In this document: piece by piece, positions 7,401-55,153 of the stretch | Numbering within the stretch: the stretch's first letter is position 1 | Layout of the letters: the number at the start of each line of letters is the position of its first letter | Assembly: GCF_963506605.1 (NCBI RefSeq) | Contig: NC_083288.1 | Coordinates: 29,574,001-29,638,000, forward strand | DNA length: 64,000 bases | Direction: 5' to 3' | Source of the DNA: Zootoca vivipara | Lineage: Eukaryota | Notes under the pieces: generated by a model | The model's database searches: none | Told to the model about the DNA's origin: nothing | The model's input: only the letters and a program-made list of their open reading frames with translations | Made by a program: the position numbers and the translations under genes

Positions 7401-7650
7401 GGGGGGGGGGAGAATACTTAGCAGTAACTTATTTTAAGATAAGGGTGCATTATCTATATGGAGTTTAAAGCTAAATTCTCCTTTAGATGAAGATTTATTA
7501 TTACACCGTTTTTTTCACGTCTTTCTTTTAAATCTACATCCCACAAAAACCACACCCAAATCAGTATTGGATAACAAGTATTTGTTATCAGAAGAGGACT
7601 TAAACCTATGCTTGTCTTCCTGTTTTCTTCTAGAAGCAGCAATCATTTTA

Positions 7651-8631
7651 ATGATGAATGCAAAGATAGGCAATGAATCCTCTGTCTCTGAATTTCTACT
7701 CCTGGAGTTTTCAGCTGTACGGGAACTGCAGATTCTACACTTCTTTCTGTTCCTGTTATTGTACCTGGCAACTGTATTTGGGAATCTTCTCATCATCTCT
7801 GCTGTAGCTTTTGACCACCACCTTCACACTCCCATGTACTTCTTTCTGGTGAACCTGGCCATACAGGACATAGGGGCTGTTTCAGTCACCATCCCCAAAT
7901 CCATGGCCAATTCTCTCATGAATATCAGACACATATCTTATGCTGGATGTGTTGCTCAAGTGCTTTCATTATTTTTCTTTGCATCATCTGATGTCGCCCT
8001 TCTTACAGTCATGGCGTACGATCGCTATGTTGCCATTTGCAATCCCTTACAATATGAAATGGTGATGAACAAGGCAGCCTGCAAACAAATGGTTGCTGGT
8101 GTGTGGGTTGCTGGCCTTCTCAATGCAGTCATGCACACTAGTGCAACTTTTGCAACCCCTTTCTGCTCAAACATTGTCAATCAGTTTTTCTGTGAGATCC
8201 CACAGTTAATTACACTTGCCTGCTCTAATTTATACCTTACAGAAATTGGAGTCTTGTTGGTGAGCATTACATTTGTGTTTGGATGTTTTGTCTTCATTGT
8301 TGTCACTTATGTGCACATTTTTACTGCAGTTCTGAAACTCCCTTCTGTACAGGGAAGGAAAAAGGCTTTCTCCACTTGCATACCCCACCTTGTTGTCTTC
8401 TCTGTGTTTTGTTTCACAGCATCTTTTGCTTACTTTAGGGTTCCCTCTAAATCTCCATCAGACCTGGACTTTGCATTAACTGTGATATATAGTCTTGTAC
8501 CACCCATGTTCAATCCAATAATCTATAGCATGAGAAATAAAGAGATTAAAAGTGCTTTATCAAAGCTGTTCGGTTTGAGGCATTCTTCTCTGGATATATC
8601 TTCCAAGCTTGTTCTGAAAAGGTATAATTAA
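7651..8631 (+). CDS. Olfactory receptor, class II family-14-like, intact (326 aa)
   Basis: LHTPMYFFL, MAYDRYVAIC, FFCEIPQL, KAFSTCIPHL and PPMFNPIIYSMRN motifs; N-glycosylation site NES; ATG follows a polypyrimidine/AG acceptor at 7633. Confidence 0.95.
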   Translation: MMNAKIGNESSVSEFLLLEFSAVRELQILHFFLFLLLYLATVFGNLLIISAVAFDHHLHTPMYFFLVNLAIQDIGAVSVTIPKSMANSLMNIRHISYAGCVAQVLSLFFFASSDVALLTVMAYDRYVAICNPLQYEMVMNKAACKQMVAGVWVAGLLNAVMHTSATFATPFCSNIVNQFFCEIPQLITLACSNLYLTEIGVLLVSITFVFGCFVFIVVTYVHIFTAVLKLPSVQGRKKAFSTCIPHLVVFSVFCFTASFAYFRVPSKSPSDLDFALTVIYSLVPPMFNPIIYSMRNKEIKSALSKLFGLRHSSLDISSKLVLKRYN

Positions 8632-12500: not shown

Positions 12501-14006
12501 GTGAAGTCAAATGGGCCTTAGAAAGCACTGCTAATAACAAGGCCAGTGGAAGTGATGATATTCCAGCTGAACTATTTAAAATTTTAAAAGATGATGCTGT
12601 TAAGGTGCTACACCCAATATGCCAGCAAGTTTGGAAAACTCAGCAATGGCCAGAGGATTGGAGAAGATTAGTCTACATCCCAATTCCAAAGAAGGGCAGT
12701 GCCAAAGAATGCTCCAACTACCGCACAATTGCGCTCATTTCACACGCTAGCAAGGTTATGCTTAAAATTCTACAAGGCAGGCTTAGGCAGTATGTGGACC
12801 GAGAACTCCCAGAAGTGCAAGCTGGATTTCGAAAGGGCAGAGGAACCAGAGACCAAATAGCAAACATGCGCTGGATTATGGAGAAAGCTAGAGAGTTCCA
12901 GAAAAACGTCTACTTCTGCTTCATTGACTATGCAAAAGCCTTTGACTGTGTCGACCACAGCATACTATGGCAAGTTCTTAAAGAAATGGGAGTGCCTGAT
13001 CACCTCATCTGTCTCCTGAGAAATCTCTATGTGGGACAAGAAGCTACAGTTAGAACTGGATATGGAACAACTGAGTGGTTCAAAATTGGGAAAGGAGTAC
13101 GACAAGGTTGTATATTGTCTCCCTGCTTATTTAACTTATATGCAGAATTCATCATGCGAAAGGCTGGACTAGATGAATCCCAAGCCGGAATTAAGATTGC
13201 CGGAAGAAATATCAACAACCTCAGATATGCAGATGACACAACCTTGATGGCAGAAAGCGAGGAGGAATTAAAGAACCTTTTAATGAGGGTGAAAGAGGAG
13301 AGCGCAAAATATGGTCTGAAGCTCAACATCAAGAAAACCAAGATCATGGCCACTGGTCCCATCACCTCCTGGCAAATAGAAGGGGAAGAAATGGAGGCAG
13401 TGAGAGATTTTACTTTCTTGGGCTCCTTGATCACTGCAGATGGTGACAGCAGTCACGAAATTAAAAGACGCCTGCTTCTTGGGAGAAAAGCAATGACAAA
13501 CCTAGACAGCATCTTAAAAAGCAGAGACATCACCTTGCCGACAAAGGTCCGTATAGTTAAAGCTATGGTTTTCCCAGTAGTGATGTATGGAAGTGAGAGC
13601 TGGACCATAAAGAAGGCTGATCGCCGAAGAATTGATGCTTTTGAATTATGGTGCTGGAGGAGACTCTTGAGAGTCCCATGGACTGCAAGAAGATCAAACC
13701 TATCCATTCTTAAGGAAATCAGCCCTGAGTGCTCCCTGGAAGGACAGATCGTGAAGCTGAGGCTCCAATACTTTGGCCACCTCATGAGAAGAGAAGAATC
13801 CTTGGAAAAGACCCTGATGTTGGGAAAGATTGAGGGCACTAGGAGAAGGGGACGACAGAGGACAAGATGGTTGGACAGTGTTCTCGAAGCTACGAACATG
13901 AGTTTGACCAAATTGCGGGAGGCAGTGCAAGACAGGAGTGCCTGGCGTGCTCTGGTCCATGGGGTCACGAAGAGTCGGACACGACTAAACGACTAAACAA
14001 CAACAA
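12501..14006 (+). mobile_element. RTE-BovB LINE, 5'-truncated, with an open RT frame (12605-13996)
   Basis: [49 protein letters not shown]; (CAA)n tail; TSD caaagaaggaga at 12489-12500 and 14007-14018. Confidence 0.95.
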
Positions 14007-14688
14007 CAAAGAAGGAGACTCCACCACACTCCTTGGTAGCAAATTCCACTGCCGAACAGCTCTTACTGTCAGGAAGTTCTTCCTAATGTTTAGGTGGAAT
14101 CTTCTTTCTTGAAGTTTTAATCCATTGCTCCGTGTCCGCTTCTCTGGAGCAACAGAAAACAATCCTTCTCCTTCCTCCATATGACATCCTTTCATATATT
14201 TGAACATGGCTATCATATCACCCCTTAACCTTCTCTTCTCCAGGCTAAACATACCCAGCTCCCTAAGCCGTTCCTCATAAGGCATCGTTTCCAGGCCTTT
14301 TACCATTTTGGTTGCCCTCTTCTGGACACGTTCCAGCTTGTCAGTATCATTCTTGAACTGTGGTGCCCAGAACTGGACACAGTACTCCAGGTGAGGTCTG
14401 ACCAGAGCAGAATACAGTGGTACTATTACTTCCCTAGATCTAGATGCTATACTCCTATTGATGCAGCCCAGAATTGCATTGCCTTTTTTAGCTGCTGCAT
14501 CACACTGCTGACTCATGTCAAGTCTGTGGTCTACGAAGACTCCTAGATCCTTTTCACATGTACTGGTCTCAAGCCAGGTGTCTCCCATCCTGTATTTGTG
14601 CTTTTCATTTTTTTTTTGCCCAAGTGTAGTACTTTACATTTCTCCTTGTTAAAATTCATCTTGTTTGCTTTGGCCCAGTTGTCTAATC

Positions 14689-16063
14689 CAGGGGTTCCCA
14701 ACAAAATTTTCTCAAGGACCCCTCATCGAGCCGCTATTGTGACAAGGACCCCCATTAATTCCTAATCCTATTAATTCCTAATCCTATTAATTCCATTCTG
14801 ACACAGATGCATTGCAGGCAGGGGGTTGGGCTAGATGACCTCAGAGCCCTTTCAGTGATAGGCTGCTGACGACATGGGCCATGGGCCCGATCCAGCAGCT
14901 GGGATCTTCAATTTTGGCTGTTTAAGATAGTATCTTAAATCCATTCGGGGGCTCCCCTTCTTGCCCGCCTCTCTCTCTGTGCCTCCCTAACCCCCGTCTC
15001 TCTCTCTCTCTCCGCCCTCTCTTTGCAGGCTCCCATCCCCGCGTCGGCCTGCGGATGGCGCTCTTTTCGCAATGCCTGGAGCCCACGGGCTTCCTGCAGT
15101 TGCTGCGCTCCCTGGCGCTGGGCGCGGCGTCGCAGCTGCGGGGCTCGGCGACGGCGGAGGAGTCCGCCTTCGTCCGCCGCAAGCTGGCGCTGCTGGAGCG
15201 TGACCTGGCTGCCGGGCCGGGGTTGTCGCTGGACGGCGCGGACGAGCTGGGCGCGGGCGAGGACTGCGTGTCGGCCGCCTTCCAGCAGCTGGCTCTGGCG
15301 GTGCGCGCGGCTGGCACGGCATCGGCGGTGCGCGAGACCGAGCTCTTCGTGGCCGCGTGCGCGCGCGAGAAGCTGGAGCGGCGCCTGCTGGCTGCGTGGC
15401 GGCGCGTGCAGGGCTGCAGGGTGGCGGCGCAACGGCCCTTGCTGGCGCGTGCCGTCGAGGAGCACCGGCCACGGAGGCCTGAGATGGCGGGCGTGTGCCA
15501 GAAGCTGAACGCGCTGCTGGGCGCAGGGCTGCTGTGCCTGCTGTGCCAGGCGGGCCTCACCCAGCGCGACCCGGCGCTGCTGCTGGCCGTCTGGGAAGAG
15601 CGCGTGGGCGCCGTGCACCGGCACATGAAGGAGGCGCTGGCCGCCTGCGCCCGCTACTTCCTCGAGCAAGCGCAGGACAATGTCGGGCGGGCGCTGGCCG
15701 AGCTGCCCGCGGCGGTGCCCCCCGGGCCAGCCGAGCTGGCCTCCAGCGTCCTGCGCAAGCTGGAGCAGAACTACGACTGGCTGCGCTGGGCGGTGATGGC
15801 CTGGCAGGAGGGCGGAGACGGGGCGGGCGGTGAGGAGGTGCCGGCGCGGTCGCGGGGGAAAGGTTCGGCTCCCACGCAGCAGCGGCTGCGGTTTGCGTGG
15901 CTTTCTGCTTGTTTGGGGGCTGATTTGGCGGCGCTAGCACGTTCGCCGAGTTTAGGAGCTCCACGCCGCCATCTTGCCTTGTCGGAAGTCCCAGTCTTGC
16001 GGACCCCTCTCGCATAGCTCGCGGACCCCTGGGGGTCCGCGGACCACCAGTTGGGAAACACTG
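14689..16063. mobile_element. Non-autonomous hAT element carrying captured host DNA (Pack-type)
   Basis: TIR caggggttcccaa / ttgggaaacactg; 8-bp TSD gtctaatc (14681-14688, 16064-16071) splitting the CR1 ORF; termini shared with 26003-26461. Confidence 0.92.
15055..16017 (+). CDS. Captured rapunzel-like ORF (320 aa); the C-terminus is chimeric and runs into the transposon end
   Basis: Strong GC3 codon bias. The RPLL...M...C..L..L...GL..L...W..RV......M.E.L..C pattern and [12 protein letters not shown] resemble rapunzel-like proteins as recalled; not searched. Preceded by a (CT)n tttgcag acceptor at 15028. Confidence 0.7.
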
Positions 16064-17113
16064 GTCTAATCTGTTAAGGTCATTTTGAAGTGTGATCCTG
16101 TCCTCTGGGGTATTAGCCACCGCTCCCAATTTGGTGTCATCTGCAAACTTGCTCAGGATGCCCTCAAGCCCATCATCCAAGTCATTGATAAAGATGTTGA
16201 ATAAGACTGGGCCCAAGACAGAACCCTGTGGCACCCCACTAGTCACTACTCTCCAGGATGAGGAGGAGCCATTGATGAGCACCCTTTGGGTTCGGTCAGT
16301 CAGCCAGTTACAAATCCACTGAATGGTAGCATTGTCTAGCCCGCATTTTACCATCTTCTTTACAAGAATATCATGGGGCACCTTGTCAAAGGCCTTGCTG
16401 AAATCAAGATAGGCTACATCCACAGCGTTCCCTTCATCTAACAGGCTTGTAATTTTGTCAAAAAATGAGATCAGATTAGTCTGACATGACTTATTTTTCA
16501 GAAACCCATGCTGACTTTTAGTGATCACAGAGTTTCTTTCTAGGTGCTCACAGACTGTTTGCTTGATGATCTGCTCTAGAATCTTTCCTGGTATTGATGT
16601 CAGGCTTACTGGGCGGTAATTGTTTGGGTCCTCTTTTTTCCCCTTTTTGAAAATAGGGACAACATTTGCCCTCCTCCAGTCTGCTGGAACTTCGCCTGTT
16701 CTCCAGGAATTATCAAAGATTATTGCCAGTGGTACTGAAATCACCTCTGCCAGTTCTTTTAATACTCTTGGATGTAGTTCATCTGGCCCTGGAGACTTGA
16801 ATACATCTAAACTATTCTTGTACTACCTCCTTACTTGTTCTGGGCTGTGTTTCCCCTGCTGAATCATCTGCTCCATATTCTTCAGGTCGGGCATTGTTTT
16901 CTTTTTTGGAGAAGACTGAGGCTTCAAGCTGTTAAGGTATCCTGGACCTAAAGTTTTCCTTTAGATGAAGATTTATTATTACACTATTTTGTTCACTTCT
17001 TTTTTAAAAATCTGCATCCCACAAAAATCACATCCAAAGCAGTATTGGATAACAAATATTTGTTATCAGAAGAGGAATTAAATATATGCTTGTCTTCCTG
17101 TTTTCTTCTAGTG

Positions 17114-18100
17114 ATGAATGCAAATATTGTCAATGAATCCTCTGTCTCTGAATTTCTACTCCTAGAGTTTTCAGCTGTACGGGAACTGCAGATTCTACAC
17201 TTCTCCCCGTTCCTGGTATTGTACCTGGCAATTGTATTTGGGAATCTTCTCATCATCTCTGCTGTAGCCTTTGACCACCACCTTCACACTCCCATGTACT
17301 TCTTTCTGATGAACTTGGCCATACAGGACCTAGGGGCTGTTTCAGTCACCATCCCCAAATCCATGGCCAATTCTCTCATGAATATCAGACACATATCTTA
17401 TGCTGGATGCATTGCTCAAGTGCTTTCATTCTTTTTCTTTGCATCATCTGATGTCGCCCTTCTTACAGTCATGGCGTATGATCGCTATGTTGCCATTTGC
17501 AATCCCTTACAATATGAAATGGTGATGAACAAGGCAGCCTGCAAACAAATGGTTGTTGGTGTGTGGGTTGCTGGAATTTTCAATGCAGTCATGCACACTA
17601 GTGCAACTTTTGCAACCCCTTTCTGCTCAAACAATGTCAATCAGTTTTTCTGTGAGATCCCACAGTTACTTACACTTGCTTGCTCAAACTTCTACCTAAC
17701 GGAAATTGGAGCTATAGTGGTGAGTATAATACTTGTTTCTGGGTGTTTTGTCTTCATTGTTGTCACTTATGTACACATCTTTACTGTGGTTTTGAACGTT
17801 CCATCTCTTCAGGGAAGGAAAAAGGCCTTCTCCACTTGCATACCTCACCTTGTTGTCTTCTCCCTATTTTGTTTCACAGGATGTTTTGCTTACCTTAGGC
17901 CTCCTTCAAAAACTCCATCTGATGGTGACTTTGCAATAACTTTGATGTATACCATTGTACCACCCATGTTCAATCCAATAATTTACAGCATGAGAAATAA
18001 AGAGATTAAAAGTGCTGTATCAAAGCTCTTGGGTGTGAAGCACTCTTCTATGAATATCTTTTCCAGGCTTTTCCTGAAAAGGTTCCATTTCTCTCTGTAG
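17114..18100 (+). CDS. Olfactory receptor, family-14-like, intact (328 aa)
   Basis: All canonical OR motifs present; closest paralog is 54164-55153. Confidence 0.95.
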   Translation: MNANIVNESSVSEFLLLEFSAVRELQILHFSPFLVLYLAIVFGNLLIISAVAFDHHLHTPMYFFLMNLAIQDLGAVSVTIPKSMANSLMNIRHISYAGCIAQVLSFFFFASSDVALLTVMAYDRYVAICNPLQYEMVMNKAACKQMVVGVWVAGIFNAVMHTSATFATPFCSNNVNQFFCEIPQLLTLACSNFYLTEIGAIVVSIILVSGCFVFIVVTYVHIFTVVLNVPSLQGRKKAFSTCIPHLVVFSLFCFTGCFAYLRPPSKTPSDGDFAITLMYTIVPPMFNPIIYSMRNKEIKSAVSKLLGVKHSSMNIFSRLFLKRFHFSL

Positions 18101-26002: not shown

Positions 26003-26461
26003 CAGTGGTTCCCAACAGGTGGTCTGGGGACCCCCAGAGGTCCGCGAGCTATGCCAGAGGGGTCCGCAAGATGCTATTAGAATAAAAAATATATTAAATA
26101 TATTTCGTATGATAACAGATTTTTTGTTTTGGCCGCTTCCTGCATGAGCAGAGTCTAGCGCAAAACTAGAATTAGATAGAGGCAGTAGTTTTGCTGTATG
26201 CCGTTAAGTGGCACTTTACAAACACTACTGATTCTACTAACGCTCACCTCCCCAAGATGCTTTGCGCGCGTCGGCTTCATTTGTGCGCTACTGCGCAGGT
26301 ACCCTGTCTTCTCCATTCCCCTCCCTCCTCCCTGGACTCTTATAAAAACACTCTTAATTTGGCTCTCACTTTTTAATTTTAGGATTAGGAATTAATGGGG
26401 GTCCTTGTCACAATAGCGGCTCGATGAGGGGTCCTCAAGAAAATTTTGTTGGGAACCCCTG
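26003..26461. mobile_element. Non-autonomous hAT with the same termini as 14689-16063, in opposite orientation
   Basis: TIR cagtggttcccaac / gttgggaacccctg; TSD ctatagtc (25995-26002, 26462-26469); empty sites at ~5934, 11687, 53088. Confidence 0.92.
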
Positions 26462-27644
26462 CTATAGTCTATTGTGTAGAATGGGAAATTGTCCTTGTTC
26501 TAGGTTTCTCCAGAAACCTAATATCGACTGCACATAGAAAAACCAGAGACCTGGTTTCCATGACAAGCAAAGCCAAATTTTGCTCAGTGGGACTGCATAA
26601 ATGTGCAACCTCATGGAGAGAGGATTATAATTGCTTTGCTACTCCATGCTCCTTTGTACAGCCCTCAGAAGCTACAACAGGTTTTGACAGAAAATATGCC
26701 AAGGATGGAGGCTGAACTGCAGCAGTAGCAAAATCGAAGTAATCAAAATCGAAGTAATAACTATCAAAATGTGTGTTGTAAATATGGAGATGATAGCAAG
26801 AGGCATCTGCCCTCTCCACATTTTTTTCTGCAGACGTCCACATAGATAGAAAATATGCCAAGGATGGAGGCTGAACTTCAGCAGTGGCAACATTCATCTC
26901 CAAGTAATTCTGGTTAGCAGCATCTACTATTTTTGAAACAGCAGTAGTTTATTTTTATTTTTTAATTCATGATTTTCAGTTATATACATTTCAATTCAAA
27001 ACTCGAATCTTTCTGTAGTTCCTTGAATTTATTTTTATCATTTCCTGCATATTCTATATTACCTTAACTTATTCTTTTATTCATCTACCTTAATTGTATA
27101 CTCTTATGAAACTGCAGTTTATTATAGTAATCCTGCCAATGTCTTTATCTGTTTACAATTTGTTTGTAAATATTCAATAAACCATTTCCATTCTTTTATA
27201 AAAAGTTCATCTTGATTTCTTATTTTTCCAGTAAATTTCACCATTTCTGCATAGTCCACAAGTTTTTGTATCCATTCTTTCACGAGACTTCCTCTTGCCA
27301 TTTTTGGGCAAATAATATTCTTGCCACTGTAGTAGCATACATGAACAAATTTCTATACTGTTTGGGAAGAGTTGTACTCCTATAATTCCCAGGAGGGGAA
27401 AAAAGGAATACTTAGCAGTAACTTATTTTAAGATAATGGTGCATTATCTATATGGAGTTGAAAGCTAAGTTCTTCTTTAGATGAAGATTTATTATTACAC
27501 CGTTTTTTTCACTTCTTTATTTTAAATCTACATCCCACAAAAACCACACCCAAATCAGTATTGGATAACAAATATTTGTTATCAGAAGAGGACTTAAACC
27601 TATGCTTGTCTTCCTGTTTTCTTCTAGAAGCAGCAATCATTTTA

Positions 27645-28601
27645 ATGATGAATGCAAAGATAGGCAATGAATCCTCTGTCTCTGAATTTCTACTCCTGGA
27701 GTTTTCAGCTGTACGGGAACTGCAGATTCTATACTTCTCTCTGTTCCTGTTATTGTACCTGGCAACTGTATTTGGGAATCTTCTCATCATCTCTGCTGTA
27801 GCTTTTGACCACCACCTTCACACTCCCATGTACTTCTTTCTGATGAACCTGGCCATACAGGACATAGGGGCTGTTTCAGTCACCATCCCCAAATCTATGG
27901 CCAATTCTCTCATGAATATCAGACACATATCTTATGCTGGATGTGTTGCTCAAGTGCTTTCGTTATTTTTCTTTTTATCATCTGATGTCGCCCTTCTTAC
28001 AGTCATGGCATACGATCGCCATGTTGCAATTTGCAATCCCTTACAATATGAAATGGTGATGAACAGGGCAGCCTGCAAACAAATGGTTGGTGGTGTGTGG
28101 GTTGCTGGCCTTCTCAATGCTGTCATGCACACTAGTGCAACTTTTGCAACCCCTTTCTGTTCAAACATTGTCAATCAGTTTTTCTGTGAGATCCCACAGT
28201 TACTTACACTTGCCTGCTCTAATCTCTACCTAGTAGAAATTGGAGTCTTGTTGCTGAGCATAGCATTTGCGTTTGGATGTTTTGTCTTCATTGTTGTCAC
28301 TTATGTGCACATTTTTACTGCAGTTCTGAAACTCCCTTCTGTACAGGGAAGGAAAAAGGCCTTCTCCACTTGCATACCCCACCTTGTTGTCTTCTCTGTG
28401 TTTTGTTTCACACCATCTTTTGCGTACCTTAGGCTTCCCTCTAAAACTCCATCTGACCTGGACTTTGCATTAACTGTGATGTATACCATTGTCCCACCCT
28501 TGTTCAATCCAATAATTTACAGCATGAGAAATAAGGAGATAAAAAATGCTTTATCAAAGCTGTTGGGTTTGAGGCAATCTTCTCTGAAAAGGTATAATTA
28601 A
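27645..28601 (+). CDS. Olfactory receptor, family-14-like, open (318 aa; DRH variant)
   Basis: OR motifs present; MAYDRHVAIC; 24-bp in-frame deletion in the C-tail relative to 7651-8631. Confidence 0.92.
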   Translation: MMNAKIGNESSVSEFLLLEFSAVRELQILYFSLFLLLYLATVFGNLLIISAVAFDHHLHTPMYFFLMNLAIQDIGAVSVTIPKSMANSLMNIRHISYAGCVAQVLSLFFFLSSDVALLTVMAYDRHVAICNPLQYEMVMNRAACKQMVGGVWVAGLLNAVMHTSATFATPFCSNIVNQFFCEIPQLLTLACSNLYLVEIGVLLLSIAFAFGCFVFIVVTYVHIFTAVLKLPSVQGRKKAFSTCIPHLVVFSVFCFTPSFAYLRLPSKTPSDLDFALTVMYTIVPPLFNPIIYSMRNKEIKNALSKLLGLRQSSLKRYN

Positions 28602-52351: not shown

Positions 52352-54163
52352 GATATAATTCCTGAAGTAATGGCTCAGTAAGTCATACACTTGACCTCGT
52401 TGGTGTTGCCATGGTAACAAAGTGCACCTGACACCCTTATCTCAGAACATACAGACACGGGGTATTTACACTGTGTACAGGACTCAGATTGTCAAGTATT
52501 CAAATGCAACAGAAAGCATCTACTTCAGACATCATAAAAGGGAGGAAAGAATGGCAGAAGTAGGAGGAACACAGTGGGGGCGGGATAGTGAGCTAGTCCT
52601 ATCTCACACCAGTATTTTAAATATTATATAGTAAATTGTTTTTAAACGGGATGGTTTATTTACATACCTTGATTATTTGTGTTAGTCCCATAGGGCAAAG
52701 TCTTTTAAAAAACACCATGGTTGTTTTGTGTGGGACTCCTGAGTCCAAGCATCCAGAAACACAATTGCTAATTTGTTTGGGGCTCTTGAGATCAAACTCC
52801 CAGGAACATAAATAGAATAATAGTAATAATTTTCCACCCAATGGTATAAGCATCGTGCTGCAAGTGTATACAAACATTTTCACTGTCTCAGAAGAAAAGG
52901 AGGGAGAGATTTAGAAAGAAAATGTTCCATGAGTAGCTAGAAGAATACAGAACATCTTAAAGTGATGAAGAAATTGCATCTGGAAATCTATTTTCTAAAA
53001 AGGAAAAGAGTAAGGTGTTTATATTTTTATAGCATTAGTGATACCTGGATAGCTTTTGGAGAGCAAAATGCAGACAATACTACTATACTATAGTCTATTG
53101 TGTAGAATGGGAAATTGTCCTTGTTCTAGGTTTCTCCAGAAACCTAATATCGACTGCACATAGAAAAACCAGAGACCTGGTTTCCATGACAAGGTAAGCC
53201 AAATTTTAGCTCAGTGAGACTGCATAAATGTGCAACCTCATGGAGAGAGGATTACAATTGCTTTGCTACTCCATGCTCCTTTGTACAGCCCTCAGAAGCT
53301 GCACCAGGTTTTGATAATCCAAACCAGGACTAATGGTTAGCCTCTCTCATACCCAAACGTGAGCTGCAACCAAGAACAAACGTTCACTTCAGCTCCTAGT
53401 GAGTGAGGAGAGAGCTTCAGCACTTCATTTGGCTTGGCTTGGCTTGGCTTGGCTGGGCTTGGTTTATCATAGTGTGGCAGCAAAAAGATCTGGGAAGCAG
53501 CAAAGCAGCTGTAAGCTTCTCTACAAGAGCTTATACATTTCTACATTCAGTTGGTACATACATATATGCACAGTGGACATTAAGATTAGAAACATACAAC
53601 AAAGATTAAAACAGTTGAAACCTCTGTGATCTCAGCTAGGAAGGAGTTGCAAAGCATCGGACCCAGAATACTGAATGCATGCCTCCTGGGAAGTAGGAGC
53701 TATGTGTCTGAGCCATGTGGAGCCACTACCAGTGACTCAGTCAAAGACCTCACTGATCAAACAGGGATATTAGGAATCAAGCTGTTAAGGTATCCTGGAC
53801 CCAAGTTGTGATAGCCATTGCAGTGGACATTAACAAACAAAATGTGAATTTGAGTAGCATACATGAATAAATTTCTATATTGTTTAGGTAAAGTTCTATT
53901 CCAATCATTCCCAGAATATAAAATATTTCTTAGCAGTAACTTATTTTAAGATAATGGTGTGTTATCTATGTGGAGGTGAAAGCTTAGTTTTCTTTAGATG
54001 ACGATTTATTATTACACCGTTTTGTTCACTTCTTTTTTAAAAAAATCTGCACCCCACAAAACTCACATCCAAAGCAGTATTGGATAACAAATATTTGTTA
54101 TCAGAAGAGGACTTAAACCTATGCTTGTCTTCCTGTTTTCTTCTAGAAGCAGCAATCATTTTA

Positions 54164-55153
54164 ATGATGGATGCAAAGATAGGCAATGAATCCTCTGTCT
54201 CTGAATTTCTACTCCTGGAGTTTTCAGCTGTACGGGAACTGCAGATTCTACACTTCTCTCTGTTCCTGTTATTGTACCTGGCAATTGTATTTGGGAATCT
54301 TCTCATCATCTCTGCCATAGCTTTTGACCACCACCTTCACACTCCCATGTGCTTCTTTCTGATGAACTTGGCCATACAGGACCTAGGGGCTGTTTCAGTC
54401 ACCATCCCCAAATCCATGGCCAATTCTCTCATGAATATCAGACACATATCTTATGCTGGATGTGTTGCTCAAGTGCTTTCATTCTTTTTCTTTTTATCAT
54501 CTGATGTCGCCCTTCTTACAGTCATGGCATATGATCGCTATGTTGCCATTTGCAATCCCTTACAATATGAAATGGTGATGAACAGGGCAGCCTGCAAACA
54601 AATGGTTGCTGGTGTGTGGGTTGCTGGAATTTTCAATGCAGTCATGCACACGAGTGCAACTCTTGCAACCCCTTTCTGCTCAAACATTGTCAATCAGTTT
54701 TTCTGTGAGGTCCCACAGTTACTTACACTTGCTTGCTCAAACTTCTACCTAACCGAAATCGGTGCTATATTGGTGAGTATAATATTTGCTTCTGGGTGTT
54801 TTGTCTTCATCGTTGTCACTTATGTACACATCTTTACTGTGGTTTTGAACGTTCCATCTGTTCAGGGAAGAAAAAAGGCCTTCTCCACTTGCATACCTCA
54901 CCTTGTTGTCTTCTCCCTATTTTGTTTCACAGGTTGTTTTGCTTACCTAAGGCCTCCTTCAAAAACTCCATCTGATGGTGACTTTGCAATAACTGTGATG
55001 TATACCATTGTACCACCCATGTTCAATCCAATAATTTACAGCATGAGAAATAAGGAGATTAAAAGTGCTGTATCAAAGCTCTTGGGTGTGAAGCACTCTT
55101 CTATGAATATCTTTTCCAGGCTTTTCCTGAAAAGGTTCCATTTCTCTCTGTAG
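54164..55153 (+). CDS. Olfactory receptor, family-14-like, open (329 aa; PMC variant)
   Basis: OR motifs present; LHTPMCFFL. Confidence 0.93.
   Translation: MMDAKIGNESSVSEFLLLEFSAVRELQILHFSLFLLLYLAIVFGNLLIISAIAFDHHLHTPMCFFLMNLAIQDLGAVSVTIPKSMANSLMNIRHISYAGCVAQVLSFFFFLSSDVALLTVMAYDRYVAICNPLQYEMVMNRAACKQMVAGVWVAGIFNAVMHTSATLATPFCSNIVNQFFCEVPQLLTLACSNFYLTEIGAILVSIIFASGCFVFIVVTYVHIFTVVLNVPSVQGRKKAFSTCIPHLVVFSLFCFTGCFAYLRPPSKTPSDGDFAITVMYTIVPPMFNPIIYSMRNKEIKSAVSKLLGVKHSSMNIFSRLFLKRFHFSL

What the first reader, a model, noticed from the sequence alone, without database searches (positions are those of the whole stretch)
14689..16063. Pack-type hAT transposon carrying a captured rapunzel-like host gene segment
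Seen: an element with 13-bp imperfect TIRs and a perfect 8-bp TSD (gtctaatc) interrupts a CR1 ORF. Only ~80 bp at the left end and ~70 bp at the right end match the sister element at 26003-26461. The ~1.2 kb in between is very GC/CpG-rich foreign DNA: an intron-like stretch that includes a worn CR1-3'-like piece at ~14805-14850, then a (CT)n-tttgcag acceptor, then a stop-free 320-codon ORF. The left junction has a short templated triplication (ttaattcctaatccta twice, then ttaattcc), typical of gap-repair template switching. Known: Pack-MULE and Pack-TIR elements capture host DNA in this way. From memory the protein matches rapunzel-like proteins (RPLL..M..C..GL..W..RV..M..C; YDW.W). Inference: DNA-level gene capture by a vertebrate hAT, followed by transposition of the loaded element. 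Intact CpGs suggest it is recent.
Basis: partly seen in the sequence, partly recalled or inferred. Interest (0 to 1): 0.92.

Follow-up and report, generated by a model that had tools for sequence, protein, structure and literature searches.

The report
Lizard hAT transposon carrying rapunzel gene piece
A 1,375-base cut-and-paste (hAT) transposon inside a CR1 retroelement of a lizard olfactory-receptor cluster has had its interior replaced by about 1 kb copied from a rapunzel-family gene (upstream DNA plus the first ~263 of ~378 codons); this is a real case of a known kind of gene-fragment capture, and the copy looks single, silent and decaying.

Summary
Positions 14689-16063 are one insertion with a perfect 8-bp target duplication. 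Taking it out restores the CR1 reverse-transcriptase frame. Only its ends (82 and 69 bp) match the sister MITE at 26003-26461.

The interior is not transposon consensus. Read depth there is 14-90, against 10^5-10^6 for the ends. Codons 1-~263 of the ORF are 84% identical to Podarcis muralis LOC144327439. That gene belongs to a vertebrate family (PF27742) that some sources name rapunzel, rapunzel 4 or rapunzel 5.

Contigs from the same species and from a related species carry the same gene without the hAT ends. They run on where the element diverges, so they are the TIR-free donor and its orthologue.

The captured copy lacks the conserved C-terminal ~115 residues. It is about 2-2.7% diverged from the donor, mostly by CpG transitions. 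Its non-synonymous to synonymous ratio is 9:6, which is the neutral expectation. One RNA run shows essentially no reads on it.

Positions 15852-15994 are a separate sequence present in tens of copies.

The scan has noted other Pack-hATs in this genome.

The parts
14681..14688 (.). Left copy of the 8-bp target-site duplication GTCTAATC
   Evidence: Sequence. Empty-site joints in paralogous CR1 copies have 8 letters that fit both sides.
14689..14770 (+). Left hAT end, including the 14-bp TIR CAGGGGTTCCCAAC (14689-14702)
   Evidence: 97.6% identical to 26461-26380 of the sister MITE. Read depth is 10^5-10^6 in organism A. At 14770 the reads of the canonical family run on into the sister-type interior (loose ends).
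14754..14794 (+). 16-bp unit ATTAATTCCTAATCCT repeated 2.6 times at the left junction; the canonical MITE has one copy
   Evidence: Tandem Repeats Finder reports 100% match. The sister sequence has a single unit. One X1 contig covers this junction at depth 24.4, with a 6-bp length difference.
14795..15054 (+). Captured non-coding DNA upstream of the donor's start codon. It holds a CR1-3'-like remnant (~14817-14855), (TC)8 at 14997-15012, an acceptor-like tttgcag ending at 15030, and 24 bp before the ATG.
   Evidence: Contigs of organism A (14809-15149, 2 differences) and organism B (14988-15838, plus others back to ~14810) cover it at low-copy depth. CR1-like alignment. Whether it is intron or promoter was not tested.
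15055..15845 (+). Captured coding fragment: codons 1 to ~263 of a rapunzel-family (PF27742) gene, with its native start codon
   Evidence: 84% identity to P0001 (Podarcis muralis LOC144327439, 378 aa), E 5.6e-130. The family alignment shows homology ending after …EEV(P/L)A. The donor contigs stop matching at 15810 and 15838.
15055..16017 (+). 320-codon ORF: 263 inherited codons, then read-through into unrelated DNA, with the stop inside the right hAT end
   Evidence: The conserved C-terminal ~115 residues of the family are absent.
15852..15994 (.). Separate segment of unknown origin, present in tens of copies in this species. The minus strand looks like a CpG-island promoter or 5'UTR (ACTTCCG, AAGATGGCGGCG).
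   Evidence: Depth is 490-570 in X1, against 14-90 for the cargo, and ~0 in organism B. Sequence. No Rfam hit. No other copy in the window.
15995..16063 (-). Right hAT end, including the TIR CAGTGTTTCCCAAC (16063-16050 on the minus strand)
   Evidence: 91.3% identical to 26071-26003 of the sister. At 15995 the canonical family's reads run on into the sister-type interior.
16064..16071 (.). Right copy of the TSD GTCTAATC
14300..16744 (-). Host CR1 copy (reverse-transcriptase region) split by the insertion
   Evidence: The frame is restored on excision. RVT_1 hit, E 1.2e-29.
26003..26461 (-). Sister MITE of the same hAT family with the canonical interior and its own TSD CTATAGTC
   Evidence: Its interior matches the consensus of the loose ends at 14770 and 15995.

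Best explanation
This is a Pack-type non-autonomous hAT element. A short hAT MITE belongs to a family that is hugely abundant in this lizard and almost absent from a related species. Its interior was replaced by about 1.05 kb of genomic DNA copied from a rapunzel-family gene located elsewhere in the genome. The copied piece holds about 260 bp upstream of the start codon plus codons 1 to ~263 of ~378.

The likely mechanism is inferred, not shown. A double-strand break or excision gap in the element was repaired by DNA synthesis. Synthesis copied the element's ends, slipped twice on a 16-bp unit at the left junction, and then switched template to the GC-rich gene.

The result is a truncated, promoter-less or promoter-uncertain gene fragment without the family's conserved C-terminal domain. 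It appears single-copy, evolves neutrally with CpG decay, and shows essentially no transcripts in the RNA run examined. The data cannot tell whether the cargo was acquired at this very site or before the element arrived here. The segment next to the right end (15852-15994) is a different, tens-of-copies sequence, so the recipient was probably a rarer subfamily or an already loaded element.
For: **Insertion anatomy**
- TSD, TIRs and a restored CR1 frame.
- Empty sites in paralogous CR1 copies.

**Family ends only**
- 82 bp and 69 bp are shared with the sister.
- Thousands of family copies diverge exactly at 14770 and 15995 into the sister-type interior (loose ends).

**Cargo is a host gene**
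- E 5.6e-130 and 84% identity over 272 aa to a 378-aa lacertid protein.
- The family is conserved in ray-finned fishes, coelacanth, amphibians, turtles and squamates, and all hits carry PF27742.

**Low copy number**
- Depth is 14-90 on the cargo, against 10^5-10^6 on the ends.

**TIR-free donor**
- An X1 contig of 1,659 bp matches 15511-15810 with 8 differences, then runs on for 1,359 bp unlike the window.
- An organism B contig of 1,706 bp matches 14988-15838, then runs on for 870 bp.
- The hAT ends are nearly absent in organism B: depth 4 and 229 in the bins that hold them.

**Direction of change**
- At 15 sites the donor of organism A agrees with organism B, and where non-synonymous also with Podarcis, against the window copy.
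- 13 of the 15 are C>T or G>A, and 10 lie in CpG.
- The non-synonymous to synonymous ratio is 9:6, against a neutral expectation of 54-61% non-synonymous.

**Slippage repeat and expression**
- The 16-bp repeat at the left junction.
- About 1.1 billion letters of a raw RNA run gave zero depth on 14796-15983, apart from a few reads near 15735.
Against: - The donor was seen only as contig pieces in read tables.
- Copy number rests on contig word depth in a region of 75% GC.
- In X1 the window's own version of 15588-15851 was not among the contigs; only the donor version was. The right half of the loaded element therefore has no independent confirmation.
- No transposase or autonomous partner was seen, so the hAT assignment rests on the 8-bp TSD and the TIR form.
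Confidence: 0.85

Rival explanations
1. One reading: the cargo was captured at another site, and the loaded element then transposed into this CR1.
For: - The family was very active in this lineage (ends at 10^5-10^6 word depth).
- The TSD is perfect.
- Unchecked scan notes report multicopy Pack-hATs elsewhere in this genome.
- Cut-and-paste movement need not raise the copy number.
Against: - No second copy with a different TSD was seen.
- The unique left junction is at single-copy depth, 24.4.
- In 100 animal genomes most single-copy Pack-TIRs arose by gap filling at the resident site without transposition (PMC8277862).
- The TSD would be equally present if a plain MITE inserted here first.
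Confidence: 0.4
2. The interior is ordinary transposon sequence, or the rapunzel-like ORF is a transposon gene.
For: Both ends belong to a transposon. 15852-15994 is repeated tens of times.
Against: - Cargo depth is three to five orders of magnitude below that of the ends.
- The homologues are full-length genes of 375-400 aa, conserved from bichir to squamates.
- TIR-free copies exist in two species.
Confidence: 0.02
3. An assembly chimera joined a GC-rich gene fragment to MITE ends.
For: The flanks are highly repetitive, and the GC-rich cargo is poorly assembled in short-read contigs. The best runs hold only 0.44-0.60 of the sampled words.
Against: - Runs from at least three studies hold roughly half of the words of the stretch.
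- One X1 contig at single-copy depth crosses the unique left junction at 14776.
- The TSD and the restored CR1 frame fit one clean insertion.
Confidence: 0.03
4. The captured fragment is functional. It could be a truncated N-terminal Rapunzel protein, or an exon trapped into transcripts of the olfactory-receptor gene 1 kb downstream (17045-18100).
For: - The start codon is intact, the ORF has 320 codons, and CpG o/e is 0.98.
- It has the same orientation as the OR genes.
- It has an acceptor-like site upstream of the ATG.
Against: - The non-synonymous to synonymous ratio of 9:6 equals the neutral expectation.
- Residues conserved in Podarcis, in the donor and in organism B are lost in the copy.
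- The conserved C-terminal domain is missing.
- There is essentially no RNA coverage, although the tissue is unknown and only about 6% of the run was read.
- Long ORFs are expected at 75% GC.
Confidence: 0.05

Closest known systems
Pack-TIR elements of animals, especially Pack-hAT (Tan et al. 2021, Nat Commun 12:4280, PMC8277862)
   Same: The TIRs and TSD of a DNA transposon enclose a non-TE fragment copied from a parental gene. hAT is the commonest carrier (208 of 370 cases). Template switching during break repair is the accepted origin. Most cases are single-copy.
   Different: - The cargo is large (~1.05 kb) and holds two thirds of a CDS with its start codon.
- The left junction shows a 16-bp slippage repeat.
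- The carrier family is lineage-specific and extremely abundant.
- A second, tens-of-copies segment sits beside the cargo.
- No lizard or Anolis is mentioned in that paper's main text (the words do not occur).
Pack-MULEs of rice and other plants
   Same: DNA-level capture of GC-rich gene fragments, often the 5' ends of genes, between transposon ends. The captured fragments are mostly pseudogene-like.
   Different: The superfamily differs (Mutator, 9-bp TSD, long TIRs). Pack-MULEs are typically amplified and often transcribed. Here no amplification or transcription is shown.
Rapunzel family (zebrafish rpz, rpz2-5; Pfam PF27742)
   Same: The cargo's first ~263 residues align along the family's N-terminal two thirds with its invariant motifs ([19 protein letters not shown]). 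Homologues are named rapunzel, rapunzel 4 or rapunzel 5 by their sources. Rpz5 is reported as a TBK1-interacting negative regulator of interferon signalling (as cited in PMC13563047).
   Different: It is a fragment, not a gene. The highly conserved C-terminal part (LEWKLPNPPPEVYA…HRLASGTVCIFG) is absent. Which zebrafish paralogue the squamate gene corresponds to was not tested.

Membership tests
Pack-TIR / Pack-hAT (transduplicating DNA transposon) | Both termini are those of an identifiable TIR transposon family | tested here: met
   82 bp and 69 bp match the sister MITE. The TIR motif occurs only at the four element ends in the window. The ends have very high read depth.
Pack-TIR / Pack-hAT (transduplicating DNA transposon) | A target-site duplication flanks the whole unit | tested here: met
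   Perfect 8-bp GTCTAATC. The CR1 frame is restored on excision. Empty sites occur in paralogous CR1 copies.
Pack-TIR / Pack-hAT (transduplicating DNA transposon) | The internal sequence is non-TE DNA homologous to a host gene | tested here: met
   E 5.6e-130 to a conserved vertebrate gene family. Depth is low-copy.
Pack-TIR / Pack-hAT (transduplicating DNA transposon) | A parental locus without TIRs exists in the same genome | tested here: met
   An X1 contig of 1,659 bp matches 15511-15810 (97.3%) and then runs on for 1,359 bp unlike the element. An organism B contig behaves likewise. The donor was seen only in tables; its sequence was not read.
Pack-TIR / Pack-hAT (transduplicating DNA transposon) | Mobilisation of the loaded element (two or more copies with different TSDs); this defines the multicopy class only | tested here: inconclusive
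   The left-junction contig is at single-copy depth, 24.4, and cargo depth fits about 2-4 loci including the donor. No genome search was possible.
hAT superfamily | 8-bp TSD and short TIRs beginning CAG/TAG | tested here: met
   Both elements in the window have 8-bp TSDs and CAG… TIRs. That these traits define hAT is from general knowledge.
hAT superfamily | An autonomous partner encodes a hAT transposase (DDE plus hAT dimerisation domain) with the same ends | not testable with these tools
   There is no autonomous copy with these TIRs in the window. Earlier scan notes call the family SPIN-like; this was not checked here.
Rapunzel family (PF27742) | Significant sequence similarity to family members along the N-terminal region | tested here: met
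   Every hit carries a precomputed PF27742. The local Pfam copy lacks this model and gave no hit.
Rapunzel family (PF27742) | Full-length architecture including the conserved C-terminal ~115 residues | tested here: not met
   The alignment shows the window ORF unrelated after about residue 265. tblastn finds no C-terminal part anywhere in the window. It is therefore a gene fragment, not a family member gene.

The most novel reading that the evidence does not exclude
This element is a two-step (nested) capture made by an unusually prolific vertebrate Pack-hAT system. In this reading, a lineage-specific and possibly horizontally acquired (SPIN-like) hAT family of this lizard repeatedly picks up the CpG-island 5' ends of genes. 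Some loaded elements amplify to tens of copies, and 15852-15994 would be such an earlier cargo. One of them then acquired the rapunzel fragment. That would make this genome an animal counterpart of the rice Pack-MULE system.
Probability: 0.2. Interest if true: 0.6.

Novelty: new member of a known kind. Interest (0 to 1): 0.35.

Why it matters
Gene-fragment capture by DNA transposons is well documented in plants. In animals it has been catalogued mostly as single, immobile cases. This is a clean reptile example:
- The donor, the direction of change and the junction slippage can all be read.
- It is large enough to carry two thirds of a coding sequence.
- It sits in a genome where the scan has flagged many similar elements.

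On its own it is a decaying pseudogene fragment with no sign of function. Its value is as one data point for a genome-wide study of how, and how often, this hAT family captures GC-rich gene starts.

Tried and rejected
- **Local Pfam scan of the ORF:** no hit, because that copy lacks PF27742.
- **ESM Atlas search with P0001:** only weak bacterial CHAT-like look-alikes (93-99 of 256 shared features). I disregarded these as chance.
- **Rfam scan of 14500-16300:** nothing.
- **Search of the window for further copies** of the cargo, of 14795-14870 or of 15840-15995: only short chance matches, apart from a loose CR1-3'-like similarity.
- **GT at 15828 as a splice donor:** rejected. The coding homology (EEV-A) continues past it in frame.
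- **Processed (RNA-derived) copy:** considered because fish homologues have an intron near residue 148. Rejected because the genomic contig of organism B is collinear across that point and the non-coding upstream DNA is shared.
- **RNA evidence:** one raw RNA run and one presumed-RNA contig set gave no coverage of the cargo. This is weak negative evidence only.
- **Not attempted:** the species was not identified, because names are coded.

Full report
**1. The observation**

The stretch 14689-16063 is bounded by GTCTAATC on both sides, at 14681-14688 and 16064-16071. Its termini are CAGGGGTTCCCAAC and, in reverse complement, CAGTGTTTCCCAAC. With up to two mismatches this motif occurs four times in the 64-kb window, exactly at the ends of this element and of the element at 26003-26461. 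Shuffles give 0.48 expected.

Deleting the element and one TSD copy in silico gives an uninterrupted CR1 reverse-transcriptase frame on the minus strand (…[49 protein letters not shown]…). The flank has an RVT_1 hit with E 1.2e-29. Contigs and reads from other CR1 copies show the uninterrupted site as a joint 14680>16064, with 8 letters fitting both sides. So the whole 1,375 bp is one insertion with a true 8-bp duplication.

Only 14689-14770 (97.6%) and 15995-16063 (91.3%) match the sister element, which lies in the opposite orientation and has its own TSD CTATAGTC.

The interior is 72-77% GC. CpG o/e is 0.98 in the ORF, against 0.17-0.34 in the flanks.

The left junction carries ATTAATTCCTAATCCT 2.6 times at 100% match. 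The sister has the unit once.

The ORF 15055-16017 has 320 codons. Openness is weak evidence at this GC content, because both strands show overlapping ORFs of 160-395 aa.

**2. What the interior is**

The ORF matches a 378-aa protein of Podarcis muralis (LOC144327439) with E 5.6e-130. The BLASTP alignment covers 272 aa at 84% identity, and tblastn gives the same alignment at 15055-15858. Other squamate, turtle and teleost proteins also match, and all carry a precomputed PF27742.

A profile search extends the family to gar, bowfin, sturgeon, bichir, coelacanth, caecilian, newt and frogs. The proteins are 375-400 aa long. A few sources name members 'Protein rapunzel' (Varanus, Dissostichus), 'Rapunzel 5' (Pelobates) or 'rapunzel 4' (Silurus). 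The exact zebrafish paralogue was not tested. The local Pfam copy lacks PF27742 and gave no hit.

In the family alignment the window ORF follows the family up to …[16 protein letters not shown]…EEV(P)A, about codon 263 or position ~15845. After that it is unrelated. The most conserved part of the family (LEWKLPNPPPEVYA…HRLASGTVCIFG) is missing and is found nowhere else in the window.

**3. Evidence from reads (runs chosen)**

I laid four runs on 14400-16350 at 80% or more likeness:
- X1: contigs, organism A.
- X13: contigs, organism B, a relative.
- X15: contigs of organism A, guessed to be RNA.
- X21: raw RNA reads, organism A.

*(a) Copy number.*

| Stretch | X1 depth (organism A) | X13 depth (organism B) |
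|---|---|---|
| CR1 flanks and hAT ends | 10^5-10^6 | CR1 flanks 10^5-10^6; bins holding the hAT ends 4 and 229 |
| Cargo 14796-15851 | 14-90 in most bins; 155-285 on the CR1-like, 14862-14927 and (TC)n bins | 9-89 |
| 15852-15983 | 490-570 | ~0-3 |

*(b) Where the family diverges.* At 14770 and at 15995 the many family copies run on into sequence identical to the sister's interior. This is shown by the loose-end consensus AAATTAAAAAGTGAGAGCC… and …TTATTCTAATAGCA. The sister therefore represents the canonical MITE, and this element's interior is the exception.

*(c) A TIR-free donor.* An X1 contig of 1,659 bp matches 15511-15810 with 8 differences and continues for 1,359 bp that do not match the window. 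An organism B contig of 1,706 bp matches 14988-15838 (42 differences, 15 gap letters) and continues for 870 bp. Other B contigs at single-copy depth reach back to about 14810. Gene-bearing loci without the element's right part therefore exist in both species.

*(d) The carrier family is lineage-specific.* The hAT ends are almost absent in organism B (depth 4 in 14730-14795 and 229 in 15984-16049).

*(e) Independent support for the left junction.* One X1 contig at depth 24.4, a single-copy level, covers the unique left junction at 14776, with a 6-bp length difference in the repeat. Nothing suggests that the loaded element is amplified.

*(f) Expression.* X21 gave zero depth over 14796-15983, apart from a handful of reads near 15735. 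About 1.1 billion letters, roughly 6% of the run, were read. X15 gave none on the cargo.

**4. Direction and mode of change**

Where X1 shows a second variant, 15 sites have the variant shared with organism B. At the non-synonymous ones it also matches the Podarcis residue: S16, P34, E43, G63, C68, P203, R207, D209. The window copy therefore carries the derived states.

Thirteen of the 15 changes are C>T or G>A, and ten destroy a CpG. Nine are non-synonymous and six synonymous. For C>T and G>A changes in this ORF the neutral expectation is 54% non-synonymous, or 61% within CpG; the binomial P values are 0.8 and 1.0. The copy behaves as unconstrained DNA that has begun to lose CpGs.

Copy-donor divergence is 8 in 300 and 3 in 152, about 2-2.7%. 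The organism A to organism B mismatch rate over 851 bp is about 4.9%. The capture therefore post-dates that split, which fits the absence of the carrier family in organism B. It is young but not brand-new.

**5. Mechanism**

*Shown:*
- hAT-type ends and a TSD.
- A genomic cargo, not a processed one. Non-coding upstream DNA is shared with the relative's locus, and there is no poly(A).
- A donor elsewhere in the genome.
- A slippage repeat at one junction.

*Inferred:* the interior was replaced during repair synthesis of a break or excision gap, with a template switch to the gene. This is the accepted origin of Pack-TIRs (PMC8277862).

*Not resolved:* whether this happened at this site or before transposition here. 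The TSD proves only that a hAT element inserted here. Cut-and-paste movement would leave the element single-copy in either case. Tan et al. report that single-copy animal Pack-TIRs mostly arise at the resident site.

The claim 'intron plus acceptor' is also untested. The tttgcag 24 bp before the ATG is compatible with it, but no transcript or gene model could be read.

The GT at 15828 is not a used donor site, because the coding homology continues past it.

Fish homologues have an intron near residue 148. The lizard genomic contigs are collinear across that point, so this gives no sign of an RNA intermediate.

**6. The segment 15852-15994**

This segment is not part of the rapunzel cargo. The donor contigs do not extend into it, and it is about 10-40 times deeper than the cargo in organism A and about absent in organism B.

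Its minus strand reads like a CpG-island promoter or 5'UTR (ACTTCCG, AAGATGGCGGCG). It has no ORF and no Rfam match.

It is either the interior of a rarer subfamily of the carrier or an earlier captured fragment. This remains unexplained.

**7. Context and earlier notes**

The element lies in a tandem olfactory-receptor cluster. ORFs with the 7tm_4 domain were scanned at 7567, 17045 and 27561, and further ORFs of similar size follow in the window. The element sits about 1 kb upstream of the ORF at 17045-18100 and in the same orientation.

The scan's notes list many other 'Pack-hAT' findings in this genome (MCAT, OSBPL10, EPB41L4B, AP4E1, DNAH10, NRG1). Several have follow-ups that report tens of copies and call the family SPIN-like. 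These are unchecked AI notes. I use them as context only and did not test them.

**8. Comparison and verdict**

This is a Pack-hAT in the sense of Tan et al. 2021, who found 370 Pack-TIRs in 100 animal genomes. Of these, 208 were on hAT elements, nearly all were single-copy, and multicopy cases were seen only in a frog and an alligator.

The present case meets the defining features: family termini, TSD, non-TE cargo and a TIR-free parent. It does not show mobilisation.

The cargo is a fragment of a rapunzel-family gene, not a gene. It is a new member of a known kind and is well documented. It has modest interest on its own and more as part of the recurrent captures apparently present in this genome.

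**Limits**
- No vertebrate genome could be searched.
- The donor was seen only through tables.

Noticed in passing
window 15852-15994: This segment lies between the rapunzel cargo and the right hAT end. It is present at roughly tens of copies in this species and is almost absent in the related species. Its minus strand looks like a CpG-island promoter or 5'UTR (ACTTCCG, AAGATGGCGGCG). It may be an earlier cargo or the interior of a rarer subfamily.
   Followed up: partly
window 14689-14770 and 15995-16063 (also 26003-26461): The hAT MITE family is enormously abundant in organism A (word depth 10^5-10^6) but nearly absent in organism B, although the host gene differs by only about 5% between the two. 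This points to a recent lineage-specific burst or a horizontal arrival. Earlier scan notes call the family SPIN-like.
   Followed up: partly
window 7567-8631, 17045-18100, 27561-28601 (scanned); 37920-38993, 54080-55153 and others (by size only): A tandem array of olfactory-receptor ORFs (7tm_4 in the three scanned), spaced about 10 kb apart, mostly on the + strand. The Pack element sits about 1 kb upstream of the one at 17045, in the same orientation.
   Followed up: partly
window 14566: Almost all CR1-family contigs and reads carry C where the window has G. This is a private change of this CR1 copy relative to its family.
   Followed up: no
proteins P0125-P0132 against P0102 (Triplophysa): Fish members of the rapunzel family have an intron near residue 148 (…FCVK|VNFVL…). 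The lizard locus is collinear across that point, so the gene structure differs between fishes and squamates.
   Followed up: partly
window 12605-13996: A second reverse-transcriptase ORF (463 aa, RVT_1) lies on the + strand just left of the CR1 copy that hosts the element.
   Followed up: no
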